A stretch of DNA of 64,000 nt from Mytilus californianus. Taxonomy: Eukaryota. The stretch lies in NCBI RefSeq assembly GCF_021869535.1, contig NW_026262679.1, forward strand, positions 15,438,001 to 15,502,000. The letters run 5' to 3'. The translations under genes were made by a program, and so were the position numbers. This document shows positions 17,301-60,456 of the stretch, piece after piece. A model generated the notes under the pieces. The model saw nothing but the letters and a program-made list of their open reading frames with translations, was not told the origin of the DNA and made no database searches. How positions within the stretch are numbered: position 1 is the first letter of the stretch; every line of letters starts with the position of its first letter.

Positions 17301-20022
17301 CAACGGACATGTTGTTTGAGATTTAGTAGGTAGAACCTCAAAAGACTCTTTGCATGCTCAGAAATATAACAAATAATCGTTATACATCTTATTCCATTTG
17401 TTAATATACTAATCACTGACATTTCCCCAATTTTGCAGACAAATTAGAACTTAGGTATCCGAATTTGCATTTGAGTGTTCAGTTAAATGTTCAAAATAAA
17501 TTTTACTATTTAACTGACTGTTTCTGTATATTGATGCGATGTTAATTGCATGTTACGGTCATGGTCTTTGTATCATGTGAAAGACTCTTATATTGTGAAG
17601 TTCGGACAATTACTACAGTACATGAAGAATATGTCAGTCATTCACCATGTGTTCCATCAGTTTATATGTTGCCATCAGTTTATATGTATGAATTCACTTT
17701 TTTGTTTACTCTTTTAAACGTAATGATATCTTAAATTGGCTTGTATTCGAAGGTATTTGTCAGTCTCTATTCTAAAACTAGTACAAAAACAACATTTTAT
17801 TTAGTATGCATAAATCAACTGAGTTATCTATAATTACTTTACAAAGTATACACTTGGTTTTAAAATGTAAGGTATATTTGCAGTTAGCATTTTCCACTAT
17901 ATTGGAACAACACGGCTTTCCACCAAGAAAAGTATCATTGTCGTATCTTTGTGATAGATTTGAAATTGATAGATTTACGGCAGATCGTGCACAACAGGTA
18001 TGTAAATTAGGGATACAGTAGTTTACCGATGTTCATATTAATCCTTTAAAAAGAGACAAGTCAAAGTAACAAACAAGTTCTGACGGACTCGCAAAAACTC
18101 CAAAAGGAGTGGGACTGGTAGCGTCGACAAGGTAATTGTCTACTGCTATGTATGCATCACCCGAGTCAACACATCATAATCGTTAAAATAACATATCAAA
18201 CGACTATTCAGGTATCTATAGATCTTAGACTGCGAAAACATGTAGCTAGTTAGAGACGTCTTATCAGTCAACCAATTCGTGATGGTGACCGTAAAACTTG
18301 TGTTGTGTCGGTTTCAGTCGTTCTTCCTCATAACTCTGTTGAATTAGTTTTGTGTTAGGCGCACACCTTGTTGATGAAGTCCGTATAGCAAGAACATGTA
18401 CTAACGTAACGGATTAATTGAAATAAGTAATCGTCATACGATGAAAAAAAGGTTTTAAACTTTTCTATTTCTTATTAAAAAATTAAAGTTTCTTTTATGT
18501 ATTAATGCCACTTTACATTTATTTGTGTTAAAATTAATTTTGTTTTGTTAATGATGGCGATAACAGTGACCTATGTGGCAATTGAACTTTGTGAATATAC
18601 TATACCCGATAGATTTTACACTATCATGCATTATCAGTTGCCGTTTTGTTGTCCGGGGGTGGGGGATGAGGGTGTACTTTTCACAAAAGCAAACTCTAGG
18701 CAAAGTTGGGTCTTAAATTGTCTTCTTTTCTTCCTAGGATTTTTTAAAATACAAAATAGTTTACGATGTATTTACGTTCCACTTTGATTTGACTCAGCAA
18801 CTGACAGACACTCATTGTATGTTACATGTAGGTAAGAAATGAAGCAAGATTTTTCTAATTTCTTTCAGTATATGTCACAACATCTGTTAAAAACAATTGT
18901 TCTGTAGTTCTTATGAAAGGTACTATATACAATATAGATCTCTTTAATGATTTTTATTTACTGTAAAATAGTTTTAAAGTAACAGAATTATTTTTAGATG
19001 AAAATGACCGACATCAATTATTGGGCATTAAGACCACTGACCAGTGAAATGATTGATGTATCTGCTGCTGATGTGTTACCTTTAATACCCGTGTACCACT
19101 GCCTGACACAGTAAGTTAGAAAAAAAAACTGCTATTCAAAATATATTGCAAGGTTAAAAACGTCAAACATAGGCCTAGTATATCCTTTATAATACGTTTT
19201 ACGAGATTAAGATAATGCAATAAGTATTAATTATATTAAATTAAGTTGATATTTTTAATCTTTAAATAGTTACAGTATGAATAGAATCAAGTGACCCCAA
19301 AGGATTGTTCCATAATGCCAAAAGTTATGTTAAAGTGTCAAAATAAAGTAAATGCAATAAATAACAAGGTCTGACGTAACAAATCCATATACAAAAACTA
19401 TTTTGACAATTTGATTTCAATTCAATCTGAAAAAGGACCGATAGACAGCAGATCAAGACGAGAATCGTTAAGATTAACAAAACAGATTCAATAAAAGAAC
19501 AACAAAGATTAACAAACAATCAATTATAACGATCTGCGTACAAATGAATAACAAAATCACTAAAACATAATTTATGAGCTGTTATAAAATCATAGAGTGA
19601 AATCGTTTGCTCCAATAAGAAAGGTGTATAATGAACAGATTCATTGGATTTCATGTTGCTACATCATTAGTTTAATAGTGCTATGATTTTTTTCTCAGCT
19701 TTGGTGTTATCCCTCATTTGATTTACGACGTTTAATTGCTATCCTTAGTATTTGTCTTTCTTTTTTAAACCCGTATGCAGCACTGACTCGTGATAATGCC
19801 TCTTTTTATACGTTTGTCTTGTTCATTAAAAATACTTTTTAAAATAAGCAGACATAAAAGTAAAACACATTCTATTTTCAATTGTGTACTTTCAGGGATT
19901 TATCTCCAGATATGTTCAGTTGGTTTGATTGTCAAAGTATCGATAGTAAATTTAATAACCCTAACAATGCCAAGAGATCAGTTCCAGTGTGTAAGAGATT
20001 GAAGAAGATAAAACATCCATGA
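14386..20022 (+). CDS. EXD1/Egalitarian-like 3'-5' exonuclease-domain protein (227 aa, 6 coding exons), predicted catalytically dead
   Basis: Exons 14386-14506, 14865-14992, 16536-16616, 17884-17997, 18998-19110, 19896-20022; all GT-AG with compatible phases; in-frame TGA just before the ATG. Motifs VIGVNCKGADLGPQGRIT, VYIFDV, KVFHDCKADSSAL..YFDIQ, WALRPLTSEMIDVSAADV match the EXD1-type DEDDy domain. Confidence 0.88.
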
Positions 20023-20081
20023 ATTGTGTTATGTTCAAAATTTTGCAGACCTGTAGATTTAGTGACAAAGAGACTCGAATT

Positions 20082-20460
20082 GAAATATTTCGGACAGTTT
20101 TATACTTTCTATTTTCGGACCAACCACAGATCATAAGAACTACGTCATCCAGACCCGAAGTGAAATATTTCGGACAGTTTTATACTTTCTATTTTCGGAA
20201 CAACCAAAGATCATAAGAACTGCATCATCCAGACCCTAAGTAAAATATTTCTATTTTCAGACCAATCACTGATTGATCATAAGAACTACATCATCCAGAC
20301 CCGAAGTGAAATATTCGGACAGTTTTATACTCTCTATTTTCGGACCAATCACAGATCATAAGAACAACGTCATCCATACCCGAAGTGAAATACTTCAGAC
20401 AGTTTTAGACTTTCTACATATTGGTAATAATCGCAAATCATAAGAACTACATCATCAATC
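20082..20460 (+). repeat. ~80-bp tandem repeat (about 5 degenerate copies) immediately after the stop codon, likely 3' UTR
   Basis: Unit gaaatatttcggacagttttatactttctattttcggaccaaccacagatcataagaactacgtcatccagacccgaagt at 20082 and 20162, then decaying. Confidence 0.9.
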
Positions 20461-21592
20461 AAAACATTTGACAATCAGTTTTGTCATTGTATTTTTAAAC
20501 TAGGAAACGGAACATTATGTGCTATAGTTTATTGTGCTTACTTTAAAAAGAAAAATTGTTTTTAATTTATTTCCTTTTTGCAATAAATGTTGAAAATAAA
20601 ATGTGTTTTTTTGTTCGTTTTGGACGATCTCAGAAGCGGGCACATATTGATATTTTAATTTCATTTGTTATGATATCTTTATATTGATAATTTTTTGTGT
20701 ATTATAGATTTACTTAACCTGTATTTCACCTGGTCAATAAAAATTATCCATTACCATCTAAGAATCAATGAAGAAACATAAATGGTCGAACAGCGTATCT
20801 GGTGCCGAAAATTAGTACTGTTAATGTTATTACTACCACTGGGGCGATATCTCTGCTAGTGGACTGTTAGTTCCTGAGGGTATCACAAACCCAATAACCA
20901 GTTCTTCGGTACCGATACGAAAATACGGATATTGTATTATTTAGATTTGTTAGAAAATTTCGAAATCATTTTAAAGTAAGGGATGTAACTCCCTCCTGTA
21001 CAACTCTGATTCCTGACCGAATTTAGCCTACTTTTGTTTGTTTTTGGTTATATCAGCGCTTCAACGTTTGTATTATATTTGGACCTTTAAAGATTTTGTC
21101 CTCGAGAATAACTGAAAAGACAATAATTGTCGAAATACGCATCTGCCGTAGAAAAATTGGTACTGTTCATGTAAATAACGTGATGCTCAAGCGAGGATAT
21201 ATTGGTTCTCCTCAACAAAACAAAGTAAACAAGACAGATACCAATCATGTAGCATACTGATAGGAGAAACTAGCACGGACACATACAATGAGTTTATCCT
21301 TAAATAAAGAACTGGATTCTAAAGCTTTGATTGCTTCAGGTAAAGTATTCTAGGCTTAAATAGTAACTTGGAAAAGAATAACAAGAAAAAAGATATATGA
21401 ACAATGCAAAAGTTCACAGCAAAACATATCTACAGTATACATATTCATTTTTAGAATACAGTCAACTGCAGTTGGGAAACTTTACCAACATCAATATATC
21501 TATCTCCAACTGTGTGTCAAATTTTTGCCGAAATTATTAAAAAAAATCATTGTATGATATGTGAGATTTTAAAATTTTGTAGTAAAATCATG

Positions 21593-24500
21593 TTATTTAT
21601 TTTCTGTAAATCTTTCAACAGATTTTTTCAAAAAGTCTACAATTACATCTAAAATTTTGCGAATAAAACTTTCCATTATTTCACCAAGGTTTTGATCTAC
21701 ATCATTATGTGTTTCTATGACCTTTTCTATCCACGGTAAGTATGAAGCCACTTTTGTGTAAATGTCAGGAAATCCTATCGCTTTGCATGACCTATCTCCC
21801 CAAGATGTCACTCCATACAGAACGAACTGTCCATTGATATTGCATACTAGTGGTCCTCCGGAATCTCCCTAGAAATAATACAAATTACATAAAATGTTTT
21901 GATGTTTGAGTGTCAGTATGCACTGAGGAAAATCGAATGCCAACCAAAACTAAAACTATGTACTGTATTTATGTAAGCTTGTGTATACTAAACGAAATAC
22001 GAGCTTTTATATTCCAGATTTGGACGTTTTATATTTTGGGTTATTGTATATACGCCATGTAAAATATAATAGTAGAATTACTTTTGCTGTTGGTTGTTTT
22101 TATGTATTTCAAAAATTAAGAACTTAAAGAGAGGGGAAAGATACCAAAGAGATATTCAAACTCATAAGCCAAAAACATGCCATGACAAAAAAAAAAAAGA
22201 AAAACGACGAGAAGACAATAAAAGCACACAAAACATAACATCGAAATTTAAAGACTGAGAAACACAATCCCCACAACAATTCGGAGGTGATCTCAGATGC
22301 TTCGGAAGGGTAAGCAGATCCTGCTTCACATGTGACACCCGTCGTACCATGCAATTTCAAACCCGGTGATAAGTCTAATTCGGTAGGTCACAATCGACGA
22401 AAAGAGGGCGGGAACTGAATCTGAGATACCGACAAAATCATGGTAAAAAAACGACTAACAACAGTCCTTAAACTACCTCACTAAAAGCTGATTTAAAGAT
22501 TGGGCAACACGAACTCCACCAAAACTCGGGGTTGAACTCAGATGTTCCGGAAGGGTAAACTGATACGTCATTACTTGGTAAACGTCTGCTCTTCTCGGCA
22601 AAACGTATACGAACTACCAGGTAAACTGATCGTAATATTTCATCAACAAAAATTATCATCTTAAATATAGAACATCACTTGCAATATGTTTGCATAATCT
22701 AAATATTTGATATGCACATGAAAAAGGATAAAATTATGAAGAAAAAAAAAACAATTTATGTAAAACACTACATGGTTGTACCTGGCATGATCCGGTATTG
22801 CCGTTTCCTGCACAAATGTGACTATCTAGTATATCTCCTTCCCATGATTGATTACAGCTGGCGGTAGACATAATAGATACATTTAAATGTTGAAGATGGC
22901 GTCTATCAGCGATACCTACAATAAAACACTCAATTGGCAAGTGTATGCGTATTTTTTTCGATTCAGTTTAATGATACCAAATCCAAAACATAAGCCTGAC
23001 AAACAATACATATATAATACAGATTTCAGTGCGCATATGACAAATGTTTCCGAAAATGACGTCTTGACGAAAGGGTTTTAAAACCAATACTACAAAATGT
23101 TTTGGGCATCAAAACAAAACCAAAAAAGGTCTAAACTTTGCACGAGGAAATTACAAACTAAGTTTAAGAACTTCTACATAATTTATTACCTGAGACTTTG
23201 TTCCAATATAACATTCAGTAATGTTAATGCCAACGGCCTAGCTACTGAGCGTTTGGTAACCTCGGAGAAAAACCATGGATTAAATAAAATGCAATGCCAT
23301 CGATAAAACTAAGAAATAATTGAGTGTCTTTTCGAATTTGCATTAAATATTCAACTAGTATAAAGATTTGTCTTACGTAAAATTAAGCATCGCGAGGAAA
23401 CGTCCAAAAACACTGTGTTTCAAGATTAAATTGCAGACTGTTTGAATCCTTCACCGACAATGAACTACGATTCATAAATTGATCTCCTTTATCAGTAAAT
23501 GTACATATATAAACATCTATGTCATTTGGTCTCCGGTGGAGAGTTGTCTAATTGGCAATCATACCACATCTTCTTATTTTTATATAGTACAGACATTTGT
23601 TTGTTGTTTAATACGGTAATGTGACCTCTAAATTTGATTTTCTGTTTGTAATATTACTATCTTATTGCGGTAGAATCCACATCACCTTATCTTATATAAG
23701 TGATCCTTTGACTTTCCATTCAGTCAGCAATCGGATATCTTTCAGTTACATAATAAAAAGATGTTTATTGTTAAAACAATCCTTGTTTGAGACGTAAGAA
23801 GTTAATTTTCTTCTTCTTCGTATTGATGTGTAAACAAACGACTATTATTTTTTTCCAATTCACATACGTTGCAAAACAAAACAAAGGAACATCTTACATA
23901 ATAATAATTACCTTTTGTGGATCCCCATCCGCTGATGTAACAATCAGAATTGATGTCATCTATATTGGTGAGGTTACTGATCGGAAGACAGGCAGTTCTT
24001 ATGTAATGATCAGAAATGTCGACAGGATGGACTAGTCGTATCAAGGCGATATCGTAAGGTATACCAGGAACATTTGCAATGTAGTCTGGATGCTGTATGT
24101 TTGGTTGTTAGAGATAAAAATAAATGGAAATGGTAAGCATCCATATTTTATTTTAATTTTAATATGTTTCACTTAAATATCTCTTTGTATGACGTTTCAA
24201 ACGACAATTGGCATAAAACAAAACGATTTTTAAGTTATTGTACCCATTTTTTGTGTTATTCGTTATCAAGTACCAAAAGCTGCAAGTGAAAAAAAAAATG
24301 GAATATATCAACTGATTTTTGGAATTAAATTAACTAATTGAAATATCTTGATAACTATTAGTAATTATGATAGACCGTAAGCCCAACAGTGTCTACTAAA
24401 TATAGTACAACATGACGAAAAAGTTATATTAATATTCGAATTTATTCCTTTAAATATCATTAATTCAATGGTATCCGGGGTAGAGAAACATGGCTGCCTG

Positions 24501-27500
24501 GTCCTCCTCCATCTGACCGGAGGACACCTGTTGGATTTTCAAATATCCAACGTGTCCGCTTTGATTAACTGAAAGTTATGTATGGGAACGCTCTTTGCAT
24601 TTTAAAAATCCATAACAACAACACTTCTGAAGTTTACCGTGCGGGATCTGTTGTAAGGCAGAAACATTTATGATAATATCCCTTGAATTATAATGTCCCG
24701 TCGCAGTCAGACTTGTATGTCCCCTGTCCAGATCAATATCCTTTTCGTATATCTGATATCGTTAACATGTTCGCGTCTTAAATATGAACGTCATACTACA
24801 TGAAAACCAACTAGCGTCCATCAATTTAAACAAATAGGTTCAAAATTACCACAATAGCATTGTACCGTGCTACCGTTTGTACTGCACATTTGAATGTATT
24901 TAACTAAGGTATCCAAAGCAAAACAGCAACAGGGAATGCATTTTAATTGAAATTATTTCAAAACATTTTGAACAAAAGTAGTACTTGCCACAATCCAGGT
25001 GTCTATCTGTACTAGTTCCTCGTTACCTGTCATAACGACTTTGTGGTGTTCACCAAGTGTTAGGTTCACTTCTGGTATGATTTTCCTGCAGTACAAAAAG
25101 ATTCATCAAACAAAAACAAATATCTTTACATTATATGACCCTGCCCAAAGACAGGACGTCTAGTTGACTGTCGTCTGTCGTAATTGCTTTTATTAGGCCG
25201 TTGGTTCTTCTGTTGTATTGTTTCAAATTGTGTTACATATATCTTAGGTATTTTATAGCTTATTAGACGTTATGGGTTCTAATCATTGTTGAATGTTGTA
25301 TGGTGACTTTAAGTTGTGTACAGCCTTGGTCTTTTGTTGGATAGTTGTCTCATTGGCAATCATACACAATCTATGTCTATATAAATTTCAAACCAGAAGT
25401 TTTTTGTAACATTTGTAACTAGTGGTGTTTAGAAAAGGTTTAAGATTTTAAGAAGCAATAACATGCGCTTTGGGAATGATCACCATCTTTTAGTATGTTT
25501 TGTGTAGCTAAGATAATGGAAAAGAGTAGAGAAGCGGCATATGTGAACTTTGATTGCTTTGGTATGAGCAATATCATGTTAAATACAGGAAATTGAGCTA
25601 AAATAACAAAGAAACTGTGTTGAAAATATATATAGCACAGAAATTATTCAAAGGAGGTTCATTGATCAAGCATCTGTTGAAGCAATTAAATAATTAAGAC
25701 ATGTAATAGATTTATAATAAAGGGAAACTATACCGTTCCAAGCAATGCGCAGCTGTAACGATCCATTGATTAGATATAAGGGTCCCACCACAAAAATGTC
25801 CATCTGCATCATCTATACTGACCATCCAAGGCCATTCCCCTTCTTCCGCAAACTGACCACCTACTATTCTAGATGTTTGATGAAAATGTTTAAGTTTTAT
25901 TCTTGTGACTTTACCACAAATATCTGTTTCTGAAAGACATAAAGTGTATTCTGAGTGCAATAAAATCTTAATATTTAAAGCATTAAATTAATAAATCATA
26001 TTCTGGTATCTTTTTGGGCTTGTATTATATTTGCCTTTGGGTTTATATGATCCGTTCATCCTATTTCGACTCTTCAAAATTCAAGAGTCTATCCTAAATT
26101 GAGGTAAATTATATGGCCTTCCAAATACCGTTTCGATTCCTAACATCACTGAAGAGACAATAATTGTCGAAATCCGGATATGGTGTACTAATTTTGGCAC
26201 CTTTTGTTTGCGATATATCATCTTTTCCGCAAGTTTTTTGTTTTCTTTTTGGTATCAAATTAATAGTTAAGATCCATTTTGTTACATCTGGTGATCCGTT
26301 TATTTGGCAATCGCCAATGGCAGTCAGCAGGGTTTAAGAACATCCGTTGTTCTACCTGCTAGTCAAATGCGTTTTGTTAAAATATACTTTTTCACTCATT
26401 TGGTCTTTTGGAAAATGTTGTTTGTGCTGTATTTAGACCCCTCTACCAAGAAATTTGTTTTGCATGCACACGTATAAAAATTGCGGTTTTTATCCAACGA
26501 AATCATAGGTTTGAACGTTTGTTTTCAATTTAGACTTGTTTATATTTTTTCGTTTGGGCTTGTATTATATTTGCCTTCGGGTTTATATGATCCGTTCATC
26601 CTATTTCGACTCTTCAAAATTCAAGAGTCAATTCCAAATTGAGGTAAATTATATGGCCTTCCAAATACCGTTTCGATTCCTAACATCACTGAAGAGACAT
26701 TAATTGTCGAAATCCGGAAATCCGGATATGGTGTACAAATTTTTTCACCTCATGTTTGCGGTATACCATCTTTTCCGCAAGTTTATTGTTTTCTGTTTGG
26801 TATTAAATTAATATAATTAAGATCCATTGTGTTATATCTGTGATCTGTTTATTTGGCAATCGCCATGGCAGTCAGCAGAGTTTAAGAACATCCGTTGTTC
26901 GACCTGCTAGTCAAATGCGTTTTGTTAAAATATACTTTTTCACTTTTTTGGTCTTTTGGAAATTGTTGTTTGTGCTGTATTTAGACCCCTCTACAAAGAA
27001 ATTTGTTTTGCATGCACACGTATAAAAATTGCGGTTTTTATCCAACGAAATCATAGGTTTGAACGTTTGTTTTCAATTTAGACTTGTTTATATTTTTTCG
27101 TTTGGGCTTGTATTATATTTGCCTTCGGGTGTATATGATCCGTTCATCCTATTTCGACTCTTCAAAATTCAAGAGTCAATTCCAAATTGAGGTAAATTAT
27201 ATGACCTTCCAAATACCGTTTCGATTCCTAACATCACTGAAGAGACATTAATTGTCGAAATCCGGATATGGTGTACAAATTTTTGCACCTCATGTTTGCG
27301 GTATACCATCTTTTCCGCAAGTTTATTGTTTTCTGTTTGGTATTAAATTAATATAATCAAGATCCATTGTGTTATATCTGTGATCCGTTTATTTGGCAAT
27401 CGCCATGGCAGTCAGCAGGGTTTAAGAACATCCGTTGTTCGACCTGCTAGTCAAATGCGTTTTGTTAAAATATACTTTTTCACTTTTTTGGTCTTTTGGA

Positions 27501-27624
27501 AATTGTTGTTTGTGCTGTATTTAGACCCCAATACAAAGAAATTTGTTTTGCATGCACACGTATAAAAATTGCGGTTTTTATCCAACGAAATCATAGGTTT
27601 GAACGTTTGTTTTCAATTTAGATT

Positions 27625-27677
<53 letters not shown>

Positions 27678-29511
27678 GTAGATATAAGAAGATGTGGTAT
27701 GAGTGCTAATGAGACAACTCTCCATCCAAGTCAAACTTTATAAAAGTAAACCATTATAGGTCAAAGTACGGTCTTCAACACGGAGCCTTGGCTCACACCG
27801 AACAGCAAGCTATAAAGGGCCCCAAAAATTACTAGTGTAAAACCATTCAAACGGGAAAACCAACGGTCTAATCTATATAAAAAACGAGAAACGAGGAACA
27901 CTTATGAACCACATCAACAAACGACAACTACTGAACATCAGATTCCTGACTTAGGACAGGTGCAAACAATTGCAGCGGGTTTAAACGTTTTAATGGTACC
28001 AAACCTTCACCCTTATCTGAAACAATAGTGTAACATCACAACATAGAAAGACACACTATAAAATATCAATTGAAATGGCTTAACTCAATCAAAAGATATA
28101 TTAACACCAGTGAACATACACTGAACAAAAAAATTTGATCTATAATACAATGTAAATACAAAATAAATAAACTAAGGGAAGAATATTATAATTAAAGTAA
28201 CATGTTATACCGCTGTGAAATGTTAAACAATTTAAGAAAAACAATATGATTGAACAAAAATATTAGCCATTTGCAATTCCTTTAAACACAGGTAAATGAA
28301 AATAATTTTGTTGTTAGGTATACGTGTACAGTTCAATTGGAGAAAGGAAATATTTTTACAAAATAAATAATTTTAATATTCATAGTACGAAGAAGAGAAA
28401 AATTATAGTAATACCAAACACCTATCAAAGCTGGTATATAGACCAGATATAACCCTGAATAAGTAAACATTAAATAACAAAAAAGCATTACAATTAGTAT
28501 CTACAGGTCAAATAAACAAGAAAGTACGATTTGAGAGTACTCGCAGTTACTGACAGCTAGTTAAAAGCCAAACACAATTAATAATAAAAAATCATGCATC
28601 AGACACTAAAAACAACTAAAACACATCCCAGGGACTTAGTATTTTAACGTCATGGACAGTCAAAGAAGACAAGACTTGTGCAATGCCAAAAATAAATGTA
28701 TCGACAGGCAGTAGGATAGTTAGGAGTTAACCTCTTTATAGATGAAAATGAACGTGGGTGTGTCATTATACATCCCGTTTGAAAAGAATACAAATTTAGT
28801 AATGTTTTAATTTGCTGATGACAAAATCGATATTAGTGCCAATGTAAACTATATTCAAAGATCTAATTACATCATTGGTAAGATAACTTTTACTAATAAG
28901 TTTGTTTAAAGGTTCGATTAGTTTACACGGATCACATAGTGATTTCCGCGCTTTAAGTACAATATTACCGTAACATTTAGGATGTGAAATACCGTTTTTA
29001 ATCAGTTTTCTACAGGTACAGCAAGATTTACTAATCAAATCTTTGTATCTATGAAAGAATTTAGTAAATTCAAGATTTATTCCTTTGGTTTTTGGCTCTT
29101 GAACCTGATGTACTGAATGAGAGAGATGAAAAACAGTTTTATCAAAAACCAAAGGAATAAAATTGAACTTCTTACTATTTAACTCACACAATTACTTGTT
29201 TTGATTTAATAATCGCTATGTACAATAAGCTGCAAAAATATATTTAAAAGACATGTACAATAAGCTGCAAAAATTTCTTTACAGCATCTGTTTTTACCTG
29301 GATGGCCGCACGCGCCTGATGAAGCTAATTTGTTTAGCGAATTATCGCGTGAATATATAAAATATAATAACTATTTTTATAACACTCATTAGTGTGTTAA
29401 AGTTACATTATTAGGTATTTATATAATTTAATTTAGTAACTGCATCAGTTTATTTTCAAACTGATCCACGCCTAGATAGATTGAATGTTGATTGTTGCTA
29501 TTTTTAGACAC

Positions 29512-29547
<36 letters not shown>

Positions 29548-31698
29548 TTCTTACATTGATACCAGTGGATTATCGGATTTATGCAATCGAGATAGTTAAA
29601 ATTTATAATTTAACTATCGAGATTGGATAAATCCGATAATCCACGAGTAACTATGTAAGAATCTGTTTCTCTAATGATTAAAAAATAAATTTTCCTTTTT
29701 TGCTAAACTAAAATCACCTTTGAGTGCCTTCCACTTTCCATAAAGTTGTCAATTTCATTAACACCTGTTAGCATATTTTGATGCATCCAGTGCGCTGAGA
29801 AAGGTTATGACCCTTAAACTCATCCAATCATCATCTGAGATCACTGGCAACCACACGTTGATTAAATTTTTTTATACAATGGGTTCGGAAAGGGATAAAT
29901 TTCCATAGAATTAGAGAAATATATATATATATATATATATGTTTATATCGAGTCACGTGACCATCGGCATTATTATGAGGTCATCTTGATAGTAGATAAG
30001 ATGGCGTATAGTCTAAAATACGTACGAAATGCTGATACATTATAACAAGTGCATGCATTGTTAAATGTTTCTTTTTTACTTTTCATAACTTGCATAAACG
30101 TTTTAGTATGTTATAAATCAAATATAAGAATTTAAGCCAAATCGATGAACATGAATTTGACAGCTAATGCACCTTTAATGCACACAATTATCTCGATTTT
30201 AGAAAAACAAAACATAATAAATAACAAGCCATTTATAGATGTCACATGCTGGTAACAGCAATTACCAATAATTCGAATCTGTTGACTGCAAAAATGATAT
30301 AGAAAGCACTGAACGGATAAACTTTTAGCTTTGTAGTGAAGGGATATAATTGTTTTTGTATATGAACGACACAGAGTTGTAACTGCCAACAATACTACAT
30401 TGTGATCTGTATAAATTGTAAATACTAGATATTGTAACGTCTAATAACATAAACGGTACCAATTTTTCTGCACCAGATGCGCATTTCGACAATCAATGCC
30501 TCTTCAGTGATGCTAGAGGCCAAAATATTTGAAAATCCAAAGCTTATTAAAAAGATGAAGAGCTATAAACCAAAAAAAGGACAAAAAAGTATAACCAAAG
30601 CCGGGCAAGGAATCAGAGCTTTGCATTACACAGAGATCAGATTTTCTATGTGACGGTTGATATTCCAGGTATTAGTTGTATAAATTATACTGAATGTGAA
30701 GCAGAAGGAAATATCTACAATGTACTGGCTAGGTATCTGTATCTGTAAGACACTTCATAAATACTATCGCGACATTTTGCATAATTACCTGGCTGTGGTG
30801 GTTCCGGGTGTGTCGTAGATGGAGCTGGTTTACAACATGTCTGACTGTTACGACAAAGAGCCCACGTATCTGTAAATCCTACACATACTGATGTATCATT
30901 TACACAAGTACCTCCCTTAGGTGTACAGGTATCAATATCTGGTAATGGAGGTCCTGGAAAACTCGTTCCTGAGGAATACATCGTGCTAGTTATATCAGAT
31001 TTTCCTTCGTCAATACATATAAAAGGAATGTTTTCTTAGGTTAAGAAAGATGGAATCAAGGCAGCAAAGAGGGGTCGCATATAATTAATTACACGATATA
31101 ATTTAACCATAAAGAGTTGTTGAGACCAGAAACCATATGAAGTGGAGGAACCAACTATAGGTCACCGTCCGGCATTACACAAAGAACAAACACATTCCGC
31201 ATATTCTGCTATAAAAGGCATGACAAAATGCTAAGCAATTTAAATCAGAAAACCAACGGCCGGATTTATGATAAAACAATAAACGTAAAACAACGACAAC
31301 TACTCAGTCTGAATCACAGGCTCCTGACTTGGGACATGCACATATAGCATGCAGCTGTGGTAAACCCTCATCTGGAACAGTGGTGTAACAGCATAAGATA
31401 TGAAAACAAACTGTAAAATTCAGTTGGAAAAAGTTTGCCCAATAAGACTGACACGAAGCACAAAAATTAACATTTTGTAAAGCATGACTACTTTAAAGCG
31501 TTCGCTGTTTGTATTCGTATTTTCTTTTTGCCATTAAACCCGTCTGATTGCATTTATCTTGATCGTTTTTGTATTGTGTCTCTGGTTGTCCATTTAACAG
31601 ACTCTGTACGGTATTTTAGGGAGACCATGATATTTTTTTTGTTTGTTTTTGTTTGTTTTGTTATTTGTTTTTATGTTTTTTATACGGGTGAGGGGTTT

Positions 31699-31729
<31 letters not shown>

Positions 31730-33514
31730 GGGGGGGGTCGAGAATCCCTTTCATTGATCATTGGGGAAAATGCAGTATTCAAGTAATTGTTTTTGTATTT
31801 CTATATCTAGTATTCATTATTACACCAAAATTCTTGATTTTATTTCTTTATTTTTAAAATTGCAGTATTTAAACATATTTCACTTGTCTGGTAAAATAAA
31901 AAAAAAAAACCATATAATTTGATTAGCAGGGTTGCAACTCCTTCAGACAAGGGGTGTACTTCTCAATATTGCATGTTCTTTTAAGGCAATTTTATGTATA
32001 TTTGGATTCCATAACTTTTTGTATGAAACGCACCTACAACATTATATTTCAGATACACGTATTTTGTGCATTAAGACCTATATGATGGAGTTCCTGTTGC
32101 TGAATCTTTGGTTTTCTATGTTGTGTTTTGTAGAGTGTTATTTGTCTTTTGGTCGTTTTCCGTTGTTGCCATGACATTTTCAGTTCGTTTTCGACTTATG
32201 AGTTTGAATATCTCTTTGATATCTTCCGCGTCTCTTTTATATCAATCGTTTAAAATTTAGTTTTGAAATTTCAAATCTTAAGTTTTCATCTAAATGTCGA
32301 AAAAAAAATTTTAGAATGCGCAATTTGATTTGTTTTGTTCTGTTCCGTTCCGTTCCGTTCTGTTGTTATTGTTTATCTTTATTGATAAAATAAATGTCTT
32401 GCAAAATAATTACATTGAAAGACATCAAAGAAAGTTGCATTTTGTAGTTTTCTGCATCTGCAATACGAATAGTAGAAACTGCATTCTGAGAAGAAAAGGT
32501 TGAATGCATGGCAGACTCTTTGTTATAGGTTTCAAAATACCTAATTCATTATCGGAATGGATGTAAATATATCTGAAACCAATATTTCTTCGAAAAAAGG
32601 ATTGACATCTATCATCAGTAATATTTAAATTTTAAATCATGTTGAAATTGCCATTTATCATAAGATTTTTATTAAATCGGACACGTGAAGTGATTAAATT
32701 ATATTCTGTAAGCATTGGTAAGATATCCTGATGTTGTCATATAAGCGTTACGATTATACTTTGGAAAATAGAATTGCCTTGAATCAAGTAAAACTTTGAA
32801 AACAGAGAGGAAAAAGACAGTAGTTGCATTGTTTTTTTTTTTTGAAAGACCAGCTTTAATCACAAAAAAATAAATATAGGTATGACTGACCTTCTGTTAT
32901 AAGATGAAGGAGAACCAAACATACAATACGACTATATCGCATTTTTCTGCTTTATTTAGTTCTATCTTTCAATCTTACATATACTGTAATGCTTTTATGA
33001 TATGTAAATAAGTGTGAGCATATATAGTAATAAACAGTTGTTGATTTGAATTTGTCATAAATGTATAAGTATTTGTATGGTAGATAAGTATTGTATATTA
33101 TGTTTGCTTTATTAAGTATTATTTTGATTTAGTGCCTAATAGGTGCAATTGTGAAATATTCAAACATAAATTATACCAGTAGAGATATTTTCTTTTATAT
33201 TTTTATCATGTGTGCACATGAGGTGCTGTTTGTTTTTTTTACATGCTTACATTTTCTGCTCTACTTTTTTTCTTTTCTTCTCCCATGGTTTCTAGAATAC
33301 AAATGCATGTATTTCTAGGTTGTTTTTTTTTTTTGGGGGGGGGGGGGGGGGGTTAAAAAATTTGTTTTATGACATTTCAAAATTGGAATGAAAAGTAATC
33401 TTACGTCCCTTGAAGGTCTTCTGTTACACTGAGACTAAAAGATGTGGAGTAGGAAGATGCTTTGATATATTGATGGAAAAGGATCAATGGGAAGAAGACA
33501 AAGAGGATATACAT
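21593..33514 (-). CDS. Secreted S1 (chymotrypsin-fold) serine protease with an N-terminal six-Cys beta-defensin-like module (about 396 aa, 7 exons)
   Basis: Exons 33514-33405 (signal peptide [19 protein letters not shown]; least certain), 30985-30789 (5' edge uncertain), 25929-25734 (R|IVGG, TAAHC), 25085-24989, 24092-23912 (YDIAL), 22915-22782, 21868-21593 (GDSGGP). Total 1191 nt in frame; all canonical S1 cysteine pairs present. Confidence 0.88.
22124..22660 (-). mobile_element. Non-autonomous fragments of a Penelope-like element 3' region
   Basis: gcaggatctgcttacccttccgaagcatctgagatcacc motif, the same as the sequence following the RT relic at 50330-50400; other copies at about 15100-15430, 32060-32240 and 51300-51870. 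Confidence 0.65.
26143..26186 (+). ncRNA. Minimal type I hammerhead ribozyme motif (array unit 1)
   Basis: ACAUCA CUGAAGA GAC AAUAAUU GUC GAAA U CCGG A UA^UGGUGU; predicted cleavage after 26180. Confidence 0.85.
26683..26734 (+). ncRNA. Type I hammerhead motif with an 8-nt duplication extending stem III (array unit 2)
   Basis: ACAUCA CUGAAGA GAC AUUAAUU GUC GAAA UCCGG AAAU CCGGA UA^UGGUGU; predicted cleavage after 26728. Confidence 0.85.
27231..27274 (+). ncRNA. Minimal type I hammerhead ribozyme motif (array unit 3)
   Basis: Same motif as unit 1; predicted cleavage after 27268. Confidence 0.85.
27627..27671. repeat. (TA)n microsatellite at the 3' end of the hammerhead array
   Basis: Read directly; the 3' end of an opposite-strand repeat (agaagatgtggtatgag) begins about 15 bp later. 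Confidence 0.95.
28500..29200 (-). mobile_element. 3' fragment of a Penelope-like retroelement (RT thumb region and downstream non-coding part)
   Basis: ORF 29191-28796: [58 protein letters not shown] resembles the C-terminal region of invertebrate PLE RTs; followed by the aactagctgtcagtaactgcgagtactc motif. Confidence 0.65.
29545..29664. repeat. Imperfect 120-bp palindrome at one end of a ~375-bp unclassified element flanked by microsatellites
   Basis: agattcttacat..gtggattatcggattta..gatagttaaa / tttaactatc..taaatccgataatccac..atgtaagaatct; (TA)n(GA)n on the left and (TA)n at about 29920-29940 on the right. Confidence 0.8.
30470..30513 (-). ncRNA. Minimal type I hammerhead motif of a second family, in sense orientation in the protease intron
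   Basis: Minus strand: GCAUCA CUGAAGA GGC AUUGAUU GUC GAAA U GCGC A UC^UGGUGC; intact core, 6-bp stem I. Confidence 0.8.
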
Positions 33515-35039
33515 ATGTGTATGTTGACGTTTGAAAATGATTGTTCATCTCCCGCCCTGTAATATATTGACCGTATTTGACTCTATACCCTGATTACCCG
33601 TTTTGAACTAGATAAACATCCTAACACGGCAATTTTACGTACTATCTCACAGGGTAACAGTCCATATAATGACATACTATGCATATTAAGAAGTATTCTA
33701 CCCGTAAGTCCACCAACAGTTGCTTTATATCTTTTTTGAGTAAGCATAGGCATGCTACCACAATGACCATTGATGCTTTTTGACATTGAGGTCAGAATAT
33801 TGCAGAAACACGTGTTCTACGCAATACACAAGTCTTCTCCAAATTCAGTCTGATGATTGATATTATTCTGGGGGGGGGGGGACTTTGTTACTAATGTATT
33901 TCAGTTGAAGCACTTGAAATGTTAATTTGAAATTGAAAATTTTACTCTATGCTGACATTTAAGAAAAGAGGTCGCTTGATAGCATGTATGTAACAAATTT
34001 ATTTATTGTGAAAAAATGTTTCCGTACGTACTCCTAACAACAAAATTATTATATTTAAATTTACATGTGTACGTTATTTTATTTAACGTCATTTTGTCCC
34101 AGGTTAGAGTTGTATTTTTGACATTGTTCCTATACATCTTTTTTTATTAATATTGTATCTATATTGTGTCATAGATCAAACTTATTCGTTCAGTGTATGT
34201 TTAGTTGTTTTTGTTTATATGTCTTTTTGATCGAGTTTAGCCATTTCAATTGATATTTTATAATATATCTTTTCATGTTGTAATCTTACACTGCTGTTTC
34301 ATGTTACGGTGAAGATTGGCGCCTGTTAAAACGTTTAAACCCGCTACATTTGTATGCACCTGTCTTAAGTCAGGAGCCAGTTGTTCAGTGGTTGTCGTTT
34401 GTTGGTGTTGTTCATAAGTGTTTCTCGTTTTTATATAGATTAGACCGTTGGTTTTCCTGTTTGAATTGTTTTACACTAGTCATTTTGGGGGCCTTAATAG
34501 CTTGCTGTTCGGTGTGAGCCAAGGCTCCGTGTTGAAGGCCGTATTGTGACCTATAATTGTTTACTTTTTATACATTGTGATTTGAATGGAGAGTTGTCTC
34601 ATTGGCACTCATACCACATCTACTTATTTTTATGTAAACAAATCATTGTATTTTCTTTAATGTATCTGTTTTATGAATTTATGCATTTATTAGATTTGTT
34701 AATTGTGGGCGCTTCATGGGATGAGGAAATAAAGTATCTGTATATTGTAAATAAATTACACTAACCATTGTGATTGTGAATCTCCGCAGTCACGCTGTTG
34801 AAACTTTTACGTTAGTTACCGACAAAGCTTTCGTGGGTATTTTTGTTTACCTCAATGGACGAATAACTTAGATGCGCAAAATTTTAAACAACATTTCCTT
34901 TTAAGTACAAATAAGAAATTGATTTTACCATTTAATAAATTACCGCAGACGACTTCGAATCGACCTGATATGAATAGAACACCCGGACGTGGATATGTTG
35001 TACCTTACGTTTCCGATTTATGTTGAAGATAAATTTCTT

Positions 35040-51135: not shown

Positions 51136-51179
51136 GCGTCAGACGCGCGTTTCGTCTACAAAAGACTCATCAGTGACGC
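51136..51179 (-). ncRNA. Minimal type I hammerhead motif, third family, intact
   Basis: Minus strand: GCGUCA CUGAUGA GUC UUUUGUA GAC GAAA C GCGC G UC^UGACGC; perfect 6-bp Watson-Crick stem I, GUC cleavage triplet. Confidence 0.85.
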
Positions 51180-51870
51180 TCGAATAAAAAAAAGTTAAAA
51201 AGGCCAAATAAACATGCTCCAGCGTGTTACTCATTGAAGTCGGTGATAAGTCGCAATCGGTGATCACAATCGAGAAAAAGATTGAATATAAAAAATGACA
51301 TAAAATGACAAAAGGACAATCAAAAGGCTCAAGTCGAGAAAAACAACCGACAACATCATAATTTGAAACTAAATACGAATAAAAGAAAAATAAGTCCACA
51401 AAACACTACATAGAAACTAAAGACTGAGCAGCATAAACCCCACAAAAACTGGAGGTTCTCAGGTATCCCGGAAGGGTCAACAGACCCTGCTCCACATGTG
51501 GCATCTTTCGTGTTGTTCATGTCAAGTCCAATTCGATGATGAGTCTCATTTAGGAATGTCAAAGTTGAGAAAAAGCGGACGGAATTGGAACATATCCTAG
51601 GTCATCTGCAACACAGATATTCATTAACGGTCATCCAAATCATGATAGCGTCCGTAAAACTTTGGAAGGAGTACTTTAACTTTACCATTAGTAATCCTTT
51701 GTTCAATAGCTTCACTATAAGTAGAAATCCTCAAAGAAATCATGGCACAAACTGCAAGCTCTGGAATATCGTATCACATTTGAAATATATACTCCATATG
51801 TGCCTGTCCCGAAAGGCAATGCTTATTTACTGCCATTTCCCTCTCGATTATCAACGAATAATAGTCATGA

Positions 51871-53387
51871 GTGTGGCTCTATGTTCTAGTTAGTGGAATG
51901 AATGTGGCTCTATGTCCTACTTTGTGGAATGAATGTGGCTCTATGTCCTAATTAGTGGAATGAATGTGGTTCTATGTCCTAGTTAGTGGAATGAATGTGA
52001 CTCTATGTCCTAGTTAGTGGAATGAATGTGACTCTATGTCCTAGTTAGTGGAATGAATGTGGCTCTATGTCCTAGTTAGTGGAATGAATGTGACTCTGTG
52101 TCCTAGTTAGTGGAATGAATGTGGTTCTGTGTCCTAGTTAGTGGAATGAATGTGACTCTATGTCCTAATTAGTGGAATGAATGTGGCTCTATGTCCTAGT
52201 TAGTGGAATGAATGTGACTCTATGTCCTAGTTAGTGGAATGAATGTGGTTCTGTGTCCTAGTTAGTGGAATGAATGTGACTCTATGTCCTAGTTAGTGGA
52301 ATGAATGTGACTCTATGTCCTAGTTAGTGGAATGAATGTGACTCTATGTCCTAGTTAGTGGAATGAATGTGGCTCTATGTCCTAGTTTGTGGAATGAATG
52401 TGACTCTGTGTCCTAGTTAGTGGAATGAATGTGACTCTATGTTCTAGTTAGTGGAATGAATGTGACTCTATGTCCTAGTTTGTGGAATGAATGTGACTCT
52501 ATGTCCTAGTTAGTGGAATGAATGTGGTTCTATGTCCTAGTTAGTGGAATGAATGTGGCTCTATGTCCTAGTTAGTGGAATGAATGTGACTCTATGTCCT
52601 AGTTAGTGGAATGAATGTGACTCTATGTCCTAGTTTGTGGAATGAATGTGACTCTATGTCCTAGTTAGTGGAATGAATGTGGTTCTATGTCCTAGTTAGT
52701 GGAATGAATGTGGCTCTATGTCCTAGTTAGTGGAATGAATGTGGCTCTATGTCCTAGTTAGTAGAATGAATGTGACTCTATGTCCTAGTTAGAGGAAGGA
52801 ATGAGACTCTATGTCCTAGTTAGAGGAATGAATGTGACTCTATGTCCTAGTTAGTGGAATGAATGTGACTCTATGTCCTAGTTAGTGGAATGAATGTGAC
52901 TCTATGTCCTAGTTAGACGAAGGAATGAGACTCTATGTCCTAGTTTGTGGAATGAATGTGACTCTATGTCCTAGTTAGTGGAATGAATGTGACTCTATGT
53001 CCTAGTTAGAGGAAGGAATGACACTCTATGTCCTAGTTTGTGGAATGAATGTGACTCTATGTCCTAGTTTGTGGAATGAATGTGACTCTGTGTCCTAGTT
53101 AGTGGAATGAATGTGACTCTGTGTCCTAGTTAGTGGAATGAATGTGACTCTATGTCCTAGTTAGTGAAATGAATGTGACTCTATGTCCTAGTTTGTGGAA
53201 TGAATGTGGTTCTATGTCCTAGTTAGTGGAATGAATGTGACTCTATGTCCTAGTTAGTGGAATGAATGTGACTCTATGTCCTAGTTAGTGGAATGAATGT
53301 GGTTCTATGTCCTAGTTAGTGGAATGAATGTGGCTCTATGTCCTAGTTAGTGGAATGAATGTGACTCTATGTCCTTGTTAGTGGAAT
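51871..53387. repeat. 31-bp minisatellite, about 49 copies
   Basis: Unit gtggaatgaatgtgactctatgtcctagtta; contiguous units with no spacers. Confidence 0.97.
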
Positions 53388-59814: not shown

Positions 59815-59858
59815 ACATCACTGAAGAGACATTAATTGTCGAAATCCGGATATGGTGT
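59815..59858 (+). ncRNA. Minimal type I hammerhead ribozyme motif
   Basis: ACAUCA CUGAAGA GAC AUUAAUU GUC GAAA U CCGG A UA^UGGUGU; predicted cleavage after 59852. Confidence 0.85.
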
Positions 59859-60120
59859 ACTAATTTTTGCACCTTTTGTTTGCGGTATACCATCTTTTTC
59901 GCAAGTTTATTGTTTTCTATTTGGTATTAAATTTATAAATTTCAAAAGATCCATTTTGTAACATCTTGTAATCCGTTTATTTGGCAATCGCCAATGGCAG
60001 TCAGCAGGGTTTAAGAACATCTGTTGTTCGACCTGTTAGTCAAATGCGTTTTGTTAAAATATACTTTTTCACTTTTTTGGTCTTTTGGAAAATGTTGTTT
60101 GTGCTGTTTTTAGACCCCTC

Positions 60121-60151
<31 letters not shown>

Positions 60152-60412
60152 TCTGTGCTGTATTTAGACCCCTCTACCAAGAAATTTTTTTTGCATGCAC
60201 ACGTATAAAAATTGCGGTTTTTATCCAACGCAATCATAGGTTTGAACGTTGTTTTCAATTTAGACTTGTTTATATTTTTTCGTTTGGGCTTGTATTATAT
60301 TTGCCTTCGGGTTTATATAATCCGTTCATCCTATTTTGACTCTTCAAAATTCTAGAGTCAATCCTAAATTGAGGTAAATTATATGGGCTTCCAAATACCG
60401 TTTCGATTCCTA

Positions 60413-60456
60413 ACATCACTGAAGAGACATTTATTGTCGAAATCCGGATATGGTGT
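60413..60456 (+). ncRNA. Minimal type I hammerhead ribozyme motif
   Basis: ACAUCA CUGAAGA GAC AUUUAUU GUC GAAA U CCGG A UA^UGGUGU; predicted cleavage after 60450. Confidence 0.85.

What the first reader, a model, noticed from the sequence alone, without database searches (positions are those of the whole stretch)
26683..26734. An 8-nt duplication converts a dimer-dependent hammerhead into one with a full stem III
The other five copies have only A-U and U-A pairs capped by CCGG in stem III. This copy reads GAAA UCCGG AAAU CCGGA UA. Because UCCGGA is self-complementary, the duplicate folds back into a 6-bp stem (A12-U27, U13-A26, C14-G25, C15-G24, G16-C23, G17-C22; last two digits of 267xx) with an AAAU loop, leaving the core and cleavage site unchanged. 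It mimics in cis the helix normally formed by dimerisation: a possible one-step route from minimal to monomer-competent ribozymes.
Basis: partly seen in the sequence, partly recalled or inferred. Interest (0 to 1): 0.8.

Follow-up and report, generated by a model that had tools for sequence, protein, structure and literature searches.

The report
Hammerhead copy with duplicated stem III
One copy out of about 15,000 of a self-cleaving hammerhead RNA repeat in this animal genome carries an 8-base tandem duplication that should give it a stable third stem by itself, but it is a one-off mutation that never spread, and the principle behind it has been known since the 1980s.

Summary
Window 26710-26725 is a perfect tandem duplication (AAATCCGG twice) inside a type I hammerhead. 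The five other canonical copies in the window lack it.

**Folding.**
- For the isolated motif, the hammerhead junction with a 6-bp helix III and an AAAU loop is the minimum-energy structure (-15.8 kcal/mol, P 0.53).
- The canonical monomer misfolds; its hammerhead fold has P about 2e-5. It forms a double hammerhead only as a dimer.
- With 20 or more flanking bases, an upstream antisense stretch beats the hammerhead in both versions. "Monomer-competent" is therefore plausible but unproven.

**Frequency.**
- The genome (1.65 Gb) holds about 15,500 copies of this hammerhead and 2,525 of a sister subfamily. Both have an 8-nt palindromic helix III.
- The exact duplication occurs once.
- Eight other independent small insertions that allow the same kind of extended pairing occur across the two subfamilies. 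None has spread beyond three adjacent units.

**Reads.** Read support could not be settled: the public contigs are too short and no listed piece bridges the site.

**Known background.** The elements match published metazoan retrozymes. Dimer-dependent hammerheads, and engineered cis helix III extensions that rescue monomers, are also published.

**Verdict.** A real but ordinary singleton slippage mutation that illustrates a known principle. First-reader notes elsewhere in this genome report similar retrozyme hammerheads.

The parts
26013..27627 (+). Array of about three 540-bp retrozyme-like repeat units with three hammerheads, ending in a (TA)n run; 34% G+C
   Evidence: Distances between cleavage sites are 548 and 540 bp. 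Adjacent units are 95.7% identical.
26683..26734 (+). The variant type I hammerhead. Helix I 5' strand 26683-88; core CUGAAGA 26689-95; helix II 26696-26708; G12A13A14 26709-11; helix III 26712-27; A17 at 26728; helix I 3' strand 26729-34
26710..26725 (+). Perfect 8-nt tandem duplication (AAATCCGG twice), probably from replication slippage
   Evidence: Alignment A1; identity check; unique in the genome at up to 1 mismatch
26712..26727 (+). Predicted 6-bp helix III with an AAAU loop
   Evidence: Pair probabilities of 0.74-1.0 in every context tested, from 62 to 552 nt
26728..26729 (+). Predicted self-cleavage site (AUA|U)
   Evidence: Position relative to the conserved core; cleavage itself was not tested
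26665..26677 (+). Upstream stretch complementary to 26706-26711 and 26728-26734. It sequesters GAA and the helix I 3' strand in the predicted minimum-energy fold of longer transcripts
   Evidence: -19.0 kcal/mol against -15.8 for the hammerhead fold in a 92-nt context. The same competitor is present in the canonical copy.
26143..26186 (+). Canonical hammerhead of the upstream unit (2-bp helix III, CCGG loop)
27231..27274 (+). Canonical hammerhead of the downstream unit, used as the control in folding

Best explanation
**What it is.** This is one genomic copy of a very abundant, roughly 540-bp tandem repeat that carries a minimal type I hammerhead ribozyme. The repeat matches the published metazoan non-LTR retrozyme type. 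The family's helix III is only A-U and U-A, closed by CCGG. AUCCGGAU is therefore an 8-nt palindrome that can pair between two ribozymes to form a double hammerhead.

**What happened.** In this copy, an 8-bp tandem duplication (most simply replication slippage) repeated the palindrome half-site. The RNA can now fold back on itself into a 6-bp helix III with an AAAU loop, and all catalytic-core nucleotides and the cleavage site are unchanged.

**What is shown.** The sequence, its uniqueness in the genome, and the predicted fold.

**What is inferred.** The variant ribozyme would cleave better as a single motif than its neighbours.

**How to read it.** It is a private mutation of one old, diverged array, not a propagating lineage. 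Insertions that allow the same extended pairing arise recurrently in this family because any short duplication across a palindromic loop makes a hairpin. None has been amplified by the element's copying mechanism.
For: - **Sequence and alignment:**
- **Copy numbers:** 9,801 exact 37-mer canonical hammerheads and 12,493 with relaxed variable positions; 15,486 copies of the 15-mer around helix III. The duplicated form occurs once at up to 1 mismatch.
- **Other insertions that allow extended helix III pairing:** six independent events (eight copies) in the CCGG subfamily, counting this one, and three events in the GCGC subfamily. Only one event is present in more than one unit: three adjacent units at C154:83.81 Mb. 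When the CCGG-subfamily motifs with exact flanks were folded, the hammerhead was the minimum-energy structure for this copy and for two others, +5 nt at C46:16.55 Mb and a 4-bp version at C88:62.71 Mb. The GCGC-subfamily insertions were not folded.
- **Folding of the isolated motif:**
  - variant: minimum-energy fold is the hammerhead, -15.8 kcal/mol, P 0.53;
  - canonical monomer: hammerhead fold -3.1 against a minimum-energy fold of -9.1;
  - canonical dimer: minimum-energy fold is a double hammerhead with an 8-bp helix III, -26.7.
- **Age of the array:** adjacent units are only 95.7% identical, so the array is old.
- **Expression:** the family is transcribed, with 2,728 RNA-seq reads laid from 6% of one run.
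- **Literature:**
  - short palindromic helix III and dimeric action, and a helix III mimicking the dimer restoring cleavage in a single motif (PMC4209133);
  - metazoan retrozymes (PMC7229834).
Against: - No read or contig was shown to span the duplication, so an assembly error is not excluded.
- With 20 or more flanking bases, the thermodynamic model prefers a non-hammerhead fold for both the variant and the canonical copies. The gain in activity may therefore be small.
- Rfam's Hammerhead_1 model does not score any of these copies, even at E up to 10.
- No cleavage data exist for this family. The oligo-dT RNA reads showed no pile-up of ends at the canonical site 27268|27269.
Confidence: 0.75

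Rival explanations
1. The 8 extra bases are an assembly or consensus error in a highly repeated sequence, and the real locus is canonical.
For: - No run held all 4 sampled words of the 104-nt query.
- Depth dips in the bin 26716-26742 in all three DNA runs, and no listed contig bridges the site.
- The 30-mer has no hit in metagenome contigs.
Against: - The insertion is an exact tandem copy in non-homopolymer sequence, which is not the usual error type of long-read assemblies (general knowledge, not tested).
- Comparable clean duplications of 2 to 19 nt occur at eight other loci. One is identical in three adjacent units, which argues that this is a real mutation class.
- The depth dip is expected anyway. 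The contigs laid on this stretch come overwhelmingly from the family's many other copies, which lack the insert.
- Logan contigs drop rare variants, so they cannot show absence.
Confidence: 0.1
2. The duplication is a functional innovation. It makes a monomer-active ribozyme that is used or selected, and it is a first step toward a new hammerhead lineage with a full stem III.
For: - The isolated motif folds into the hammerhead as its minimum-energy structure, and the helix III hairpin is stable in all contexts.
- Engineered equivalents restore some cleavage in single motifs (PMC4209133).
Against: - It is a singleton among about 15,500 copies.
- Eight other independent events of the same kind also failed to spread.
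- It sits in an old array whose units differ by 4%.
- A competing fold still wins when flanks are included.
- Published reasoning holds that a weak helix III is the selected state, because it spares the circular monomer from re-cleavage (PMC4209133).
Confidence: 0.05
3. The stabilised helix III is harmful to the element. A ribozyme that is active as a monomer would re-cut its own circular RNA, so such variants are removed from the pool of copies that retrotranspose. That would explain why they stay singletons.
For: - Both large subfamilies retain the minimal palindromic helix III.
- Nine independent lengthening events, this one included, show no dispersal.
- The regulatory idea is published for viroids and tandem hammerheads (PMC4209133; PMC6466107).
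Against: - Failure to spread is also what is expected of any neutral mutation that arises in a non-master genomic copy, so the counts do not discriminate between the two.
- Nothing here measures the stability of the circle.
Confidence: 0.2

Closest known systems
Metazoan non-LTR retrozymes with type I hammerheads (Cervera and de la Pena 2020, PMC7229834)
   Same: - Short, low-GC tandem repeats (34% G+C here), each with a type I hammerhead.
- Thousands of copies, which are transcribed.
- Helix III of 2 bp capped by a tetraloop, described there as typical of invertebrate hammerheads.
- The second subfamily here has hits spaced 350-366 bp apart in places, like the 350-390 bp repeats reported for the mussel.
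   Different: - The unit is about 540 bp, longer than the published 170-400 nt RNAs.
- The hammerhead sequence was not found in the searchable paper library.
- Circular RNA was not examined here.
Double-hammerhead self-cleavage of newt satellite 2 and avocado sunblotch viroid RNAs (Forster et al. 1988, as cited in PMC4209133 and PMC6466107)
   Same: - Helix III is too weak in a single motif, and a palindromic loop lets two motifs share one long helix III.
- Cofolding predicts exactly this for the canonical copies.
   Different: Dimer dependence has not been measured for this family. The amphibian motifs have a 1-bp stem, whereas this family has 2 bp.
Engineered single hammerheads given a helix III that mimics the dimer (Cervera and de la Pena 2014, PMC4209133, its fig. 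S6B-C)
   Same: The same structural change, a cis helix III replacing the intermolecular one, and it restored detectable self-cleavage.
   Different: - Those constructs were made in the laboratory in Schistosoma and Drosophila virilis motifs, and they cleaved mostly at non-physiological Mg2+.
- Here the change arose naturally through an 8-nt duplication.
Rfam Hammerhead_1 (RF00163)
   Same: Same core (CUGANGA ... GAAA ... UH), same type I topology, palindromic helix III.
   Different: None of these copies reaches the model's threshold, even at E up to 10. A different hammerhead at 51136-51179(-) does reach it, at 34.8 bits.

Membership tests
Hammerhead ribozyme, type I | Conserved core: C3 U4 G5 A6 N7 G8 A9, then G12 A13 A14, with an A15.1-U16.1 pair and a non-G nucleotide at position 17 | tested here: met
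   CUGAAGA at 26689-95, GAA at 26709-11, A26712-U26727, A17 at 26728
Hammerhead ribozyme, type I | Three helices around the core, with the open ends at helix I | tested here: met
   Helix I 6 bp, helix II 4 bp, helix III 6 bp. This is the minimum-energy fold of the isolated 62-nt motif. It is not the minimum-energy fold once 20 or more flanking bases are added.
Hammerhead ribozyme, type I | Score at or above the Rfam RF00163 gathering threshold | tested here: not met
   No Hammerhead_1 match at 20000-34000 even at E up to 10. The model expects a GUC site and a CG-rich helix III.
Hammerhead ribozyme, type I | Site-specific self-cleavage | not testable with these tools
   The RNA reads showed no pile-up of ends at the canonical site. 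The library was oligo-dT and the reads come from the whole family.
Metazoan non-LTR retrozyme | Head-to-tail repeats of a few hundred bp, low G+C, one type I hammerhead per unit, many copies | tested here: met
   Units of 540/548 bp, 34% G+C, about 15,500 copies, arrays with a period of about 539 bp. The unit is longer than the published 150-450 bp.
Metazoan non-LTR retrozyme | Expressed as linear and circular monomer RNAs | tested here: inconclusive
   Family-level RNA-seq reads are present in both orientations. Circularity and unit-length RNA cannot be assessed.
Dimer-dependent (double) hammerhead | Helix III of 1-2 bp with a palindromic loop, and motifs in tandem | tested here: met
   AUCCGGAU is an 8-nt palindrome in a tandem array. 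The sister subfamily has AUGCGCAU. Counts are 15,486 and 2,525, against 77 and 219 for the half-changed loops.
Dimer-dependent (double) hammerhead | Little cleavage as a monomer, efficient cleavage as a dimer | not testable with these tools
   Only thermodynamic predictions are available. The literature reports monomer activity for invertebrate 2-bp motifs (PMC7229834).

The most novel reading that the evidence does not exclude
Slippage duplications across the palindromic loop III are a recurrent natural source of monomer-active hammerheads in retrozyme families. This copy, together with the eight other independent events found here, would be a ready-made natural allelic series (about 3 to 8 bp of cis helix III). 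With it one could measure how helix III stability trades ribozyme activity against circular-RNA survival, and so why metazoan retrozymes keep a crippled helix III.
Probability: 0.12. Interest if true: 0.5.

Novelty: new member of a known kind. Interest (0 to 1): 0.25.

Why it matters
It is a clear natural illustration of a principle already shown with engineered RNAs: a palindromic loop III lets one short duplication replace an intermolecular helix with an intramolecular one.

The genome-wide counts add a modest point. Such variants arise repeatedly (nine independent events, this one included, among roughly 18,000 hammerheads), yet none has founded a dispersed lineage. Both large subfamilies keep the minimal palindromic helix III. 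That is compatible with the published idea that a weak helix III is the maintained state in circular-RNA retroelements, but it does not prove it.

The finding does not open a new question and does not reveal a new kind of element.

Tried and rejected
- **Read support.** The run index gave only 4 sampled words, and no run held all of them. Three DNA runs and one RNA run were laid on 26500-27300. They gave tens of thousands of short contigs from the whole family, and no listed piece bridged the duplication. The read starts and ends at 26716/26717 are canonical reads clipped at the duplication junction, not cleavage ends. The result is inconclusive and both caps are used.
- **Rfam.** The gathering and E up to 10 scans do not detect this hammerhead family.
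- **Metagenome contigs.** A scan for the duplicated 30-mer found 0 hits.
- **Papers.** A search for the hammerhead sequence in the paper library and in the supplement of PMC7229834 found 0 hits.
- **Within-family conservation of the palindrome.** In the first 100 listed copies, the five helix III positions vary at least as much as the other free positions (18 against 10 variant copies). Decaying genomic copies therefore say nothing about selection, and only the comparison between subfamilies was used.
- **Failure to spread as evidence of harm.** I considered reading it this way and rejected it as not decisive. It is also the null expectation for a mutation in a non-master copy.

Full report
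**1. The observation**

- Window 26689-26733 holds the hammerhead core CUGAAGA, a 4-bp helix II, GAA, then AAATCCGG written twice in tandem (26710-26717 and 26718-26725, identical by script). ATA and TGGTGT follow.
- A pattern scan finds six copies of this hammerhead in the window with an intact CCGG loop: 7420(-), 26149, 26689, 27237, 59821 and 60419. It also finds one divergent copy at 30479(-). The scan gave 7 matches against 0 in 100 shuffles.
- In the alignment, only the copy at 26689 has the 8 extra bases (A1).
The core, the A15.1-U16.1 pair, A17 (26728) and the helix I strands (26683-88 and 26729-34) are unchanged.

**2. What the element is**

- The copy sits in an array of three hammerheads (about 26013-27627) that ends in a (TA)n run.
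- The cleavage-site to cleavage-site distances are 548 and 540 bp. The two full units are 95.7% identical, with 23 mismatches. G+C is 34%.
- The genome is 1.65 Gb in 175 contigs. It holds 9,801 exact copies of the 37-nt canonical hammerhead, commonly in arrays with a period of about 539 bp. With the variable positions freed there are 12,493 copies. The 15-mer around helix III occurs 15,486 times.
- A sister subfamily, to which the copy at 30479(-) belongs, has GCGC instead of CCGG in loop III. It has 2,525 copies, and in places adjacent hits are 350-366 bp apart.
- This is the anatomy of the metazoan non-LTR retrozymes described by Cervera and de la Pena (PMC7229834):
  - each with a type I hammerhead;
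- That paper describes a 2-bp helix III capped by a tetraloop as typical of invertebrate hammerheads. For a mussel it reports about 5,000 hammerheads in repeats of 350-390 bp.
- Family-level transcription is visible here: 2,728 reads from 6% of an oligo-dT RNA-seq run lay on the stretch, in both orientations.
- Rfam's Hammerhead_1 model does not detect these copies even at E up to 10. Its only hit in the window is a different hammerhead at 51136-51179(-).

**3. Folding**

Isolated motifs:

| Motif | Minimum-energy fold | Hammerhead fold |
|---|---|---|
| Canonical monomer, 54 nt | -9.1 kcal/mol; a misfold in which CUG of the core pairs with CGG of loop III | -3.1 kcal/mol, P about 2e-5 |
| Variant, 62 nt | -15.8 kcal/mol; the three-way hammerhead junction with a 6-bp helix III and an AAAU loop | same structure, P 0.53; helix III pairs 0.90-1.0 |
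| Two canonical motifs cofolded | -26.7 kcal/mol; a double hammerhead sharing an 8-bp helix III (AUCCGGAU with itself) | same structure |

Context weakens it.

- With 20, 100 or 250 flanking bases, helix I has a probability of about 0 in all three hammerheads of the array. Helix II is also weak: at most 0.08 in the canonical copies and 0.10-0.48 in the variant.
- The reason is an upstream stretch (26665-26677) that pairs with 26706-26711 and 26728-26734.
- In the variant this competitor wins by only 3.2 kcal/mol (-19.0 against -15.8). In the canonical copy it wins by about 13 kcal/mol. For two canonical motifs with flanks, it also beats the double hammerhead (-40.8 against -26.7).
- The new helix III hairpin itself stays at P 0.74-1.0 in every context.
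- Nearest-neighbour energies ignore the tertiary contacts of the hammerhead and the order of transcription.
- The fair statement is this: the duplication removes most of the predicted penalty for the active fold, but these tools cannot show monomer competence.

**4. Is the canonical form dimer-dependent?**

- Published work states that most metazoan type I hammerheads have a helix III of 1-2 bp capped by a small palindromic loop. It states that this impedes cleavage as a monomer and that two motifs in tandem form an active dimer. It suggests this spares the circular monomer from re-cleavage (PMC4209133, citing Forster et al. 1988; see also PMC6466107).
- The genome adds one piece of evidence. 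The two large subfamilies differ by a double change at loop positions 1 and 4 (CCGG to GCGC), and that change keeps the 8-mer self-complementary.
- The half-changed loops are rare. GCGG has 77 copies. CCGC has 219, most of them in one local array on C24.
- Loop nucleotides that covary to preserve a palindrome make sense only if they pair between molecules.
- This is one compensatory event, not a statistic.
- Against strict dependence, PMC7229834 reports efficient monomeric cleavage for most invertebrate retrozyme hammerheads and kobs of about 0.1/min for a mussel repeat.

**5. How often does this happen?**

- The exact duplication occurs once in the genome at up to 1 mismatch.
- With exact flanks, 16 copies have an insertion of 3-19 nt between GAAA and the cleavage site.
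- Searching for any insertion that leaves AUCCG ... CGGAU able to pair in cis finds eight copies from six independent events:

| Locus | Insertion |
|---|---|
| C1:84.99 Mb | +2 nt |
| C46:16.55 Mb | +5 nt |
| This copy | +8 nt |
| C46:28.15 Mb | +13 nt |
| C154:83.81 Mb | +16 nt, in three adjacent units |
| C1:99.19 Mb | +18 nt; core also mutated |

- The GCGC subfamily has three analogous events: +2, +4 and +19 nt. These three were not folded.
- When the CCGG-subfamily motifs were folded, the hammerhead is the minimum-energy structure for three: this copy, the +5 variant (5 bp with an AUC loop, -11.2) and a 4-bp variant at C88:62.71 Mb (-9.1). The +16 variant forms an 8-bp helix III with a shifted helix I.
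- The class is therefore recurrent, as expected: any short duplication across a palindrome makes a hairpin.
- Every event is confined to one locus. No dispersed lineage with a lengthened helix III derives from these families.
- This shows no advantage. It does not show a disadvantage, because a neutral mutation in a non-master copy would not spread either.

**6. Is the duplication real?**

- The run index sampled only 4 words of the 104-nt query, and no run held all 4.
- The laid contigs of the three DNA runs are short pieces from the whole family. Depth dips in bin 26716-26742, and no listed piece bridges the site.
- The RNA read starts and ends at 26716/26717 are clipped canonical reads.
- The question stays open. 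I consider the duplication probably real, because it is an exact tandem copy in non-homopolymer sequence and the same class of change occurs at eight other loci. That is an inference.

**7. Verdict**

- It is unsupported as an evolutionary route actually taken.
- The principle is known: double hammerheads date from 1988, and engineered cis helix III mimics of the dimer are in PMC4209133.
- The element belongs to a known kind.
- Interest is low to moderate. Its main value is as one member of a small natural allelic series for testing why retrozymes keep a weak helix III.

Noticed in passing
window 51136-51179 (-): A different type I hammerhead (GUC site, CGCG-type helix III) reaches the Rfam Hammerhead_1 threshold at 34.8 bits. 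It lies about 700 bp from a 31-bp repeat of 49 copies at 51867-53387. The genome has other such hits.
   Followed up: partly
window 30479-30507 (-): A copy of a sister hammerhead subfamily with loop GCGC (AUGCGCAU palindrome) and an AUC cleavage triplet. There are 2,525 copies genome-wide, with adjacent hits 350-366 bp apart in places.
   Followed up: partly
window 26665-26677 (and the same offset in the other units): A stretch just upstream of every hammerhead is complementary to GUCGAA of the core and to the helix I 3' strand. In predicted folds it blocks the hammerhead in transcripts with flanks. It could be a built-in off-switch or part of the rod-like fold of the circle.
   Followed up: partly
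G000:C24:13178176-13308709: A large one-strand array holds most of the 219 copies with the non-palindromic loop CCGC. Hits are irregularly spaced, from a few hundred bp to about 3 kb, which looks like DNA-level satellite amplification of a mutated unit.
   Followed up: no
G000:C154:83810753-83811912 (L013-L015): Three adjacent units share a 16-nt duplication that would give an 8-bp cis helix III with an 8-nt loop. It is the only lengthened variant present in more than one unit.
   Followed up: partly
window 29530-29680: A long, near-perfect inverted repeat gives spurious microRNA-family matches far below their thresholds (MIR869 at 42 bits against 330). It is probably a foldback or MITE-like element.
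   Followed up: no
window 59853-60450: The unit between the two hammerheads at 59821 and 60419 is 598 bp. It carries an internal insertion of about 53 bp that includes a (TA)n run, relative to the 540-bp units.
   Followed up: no
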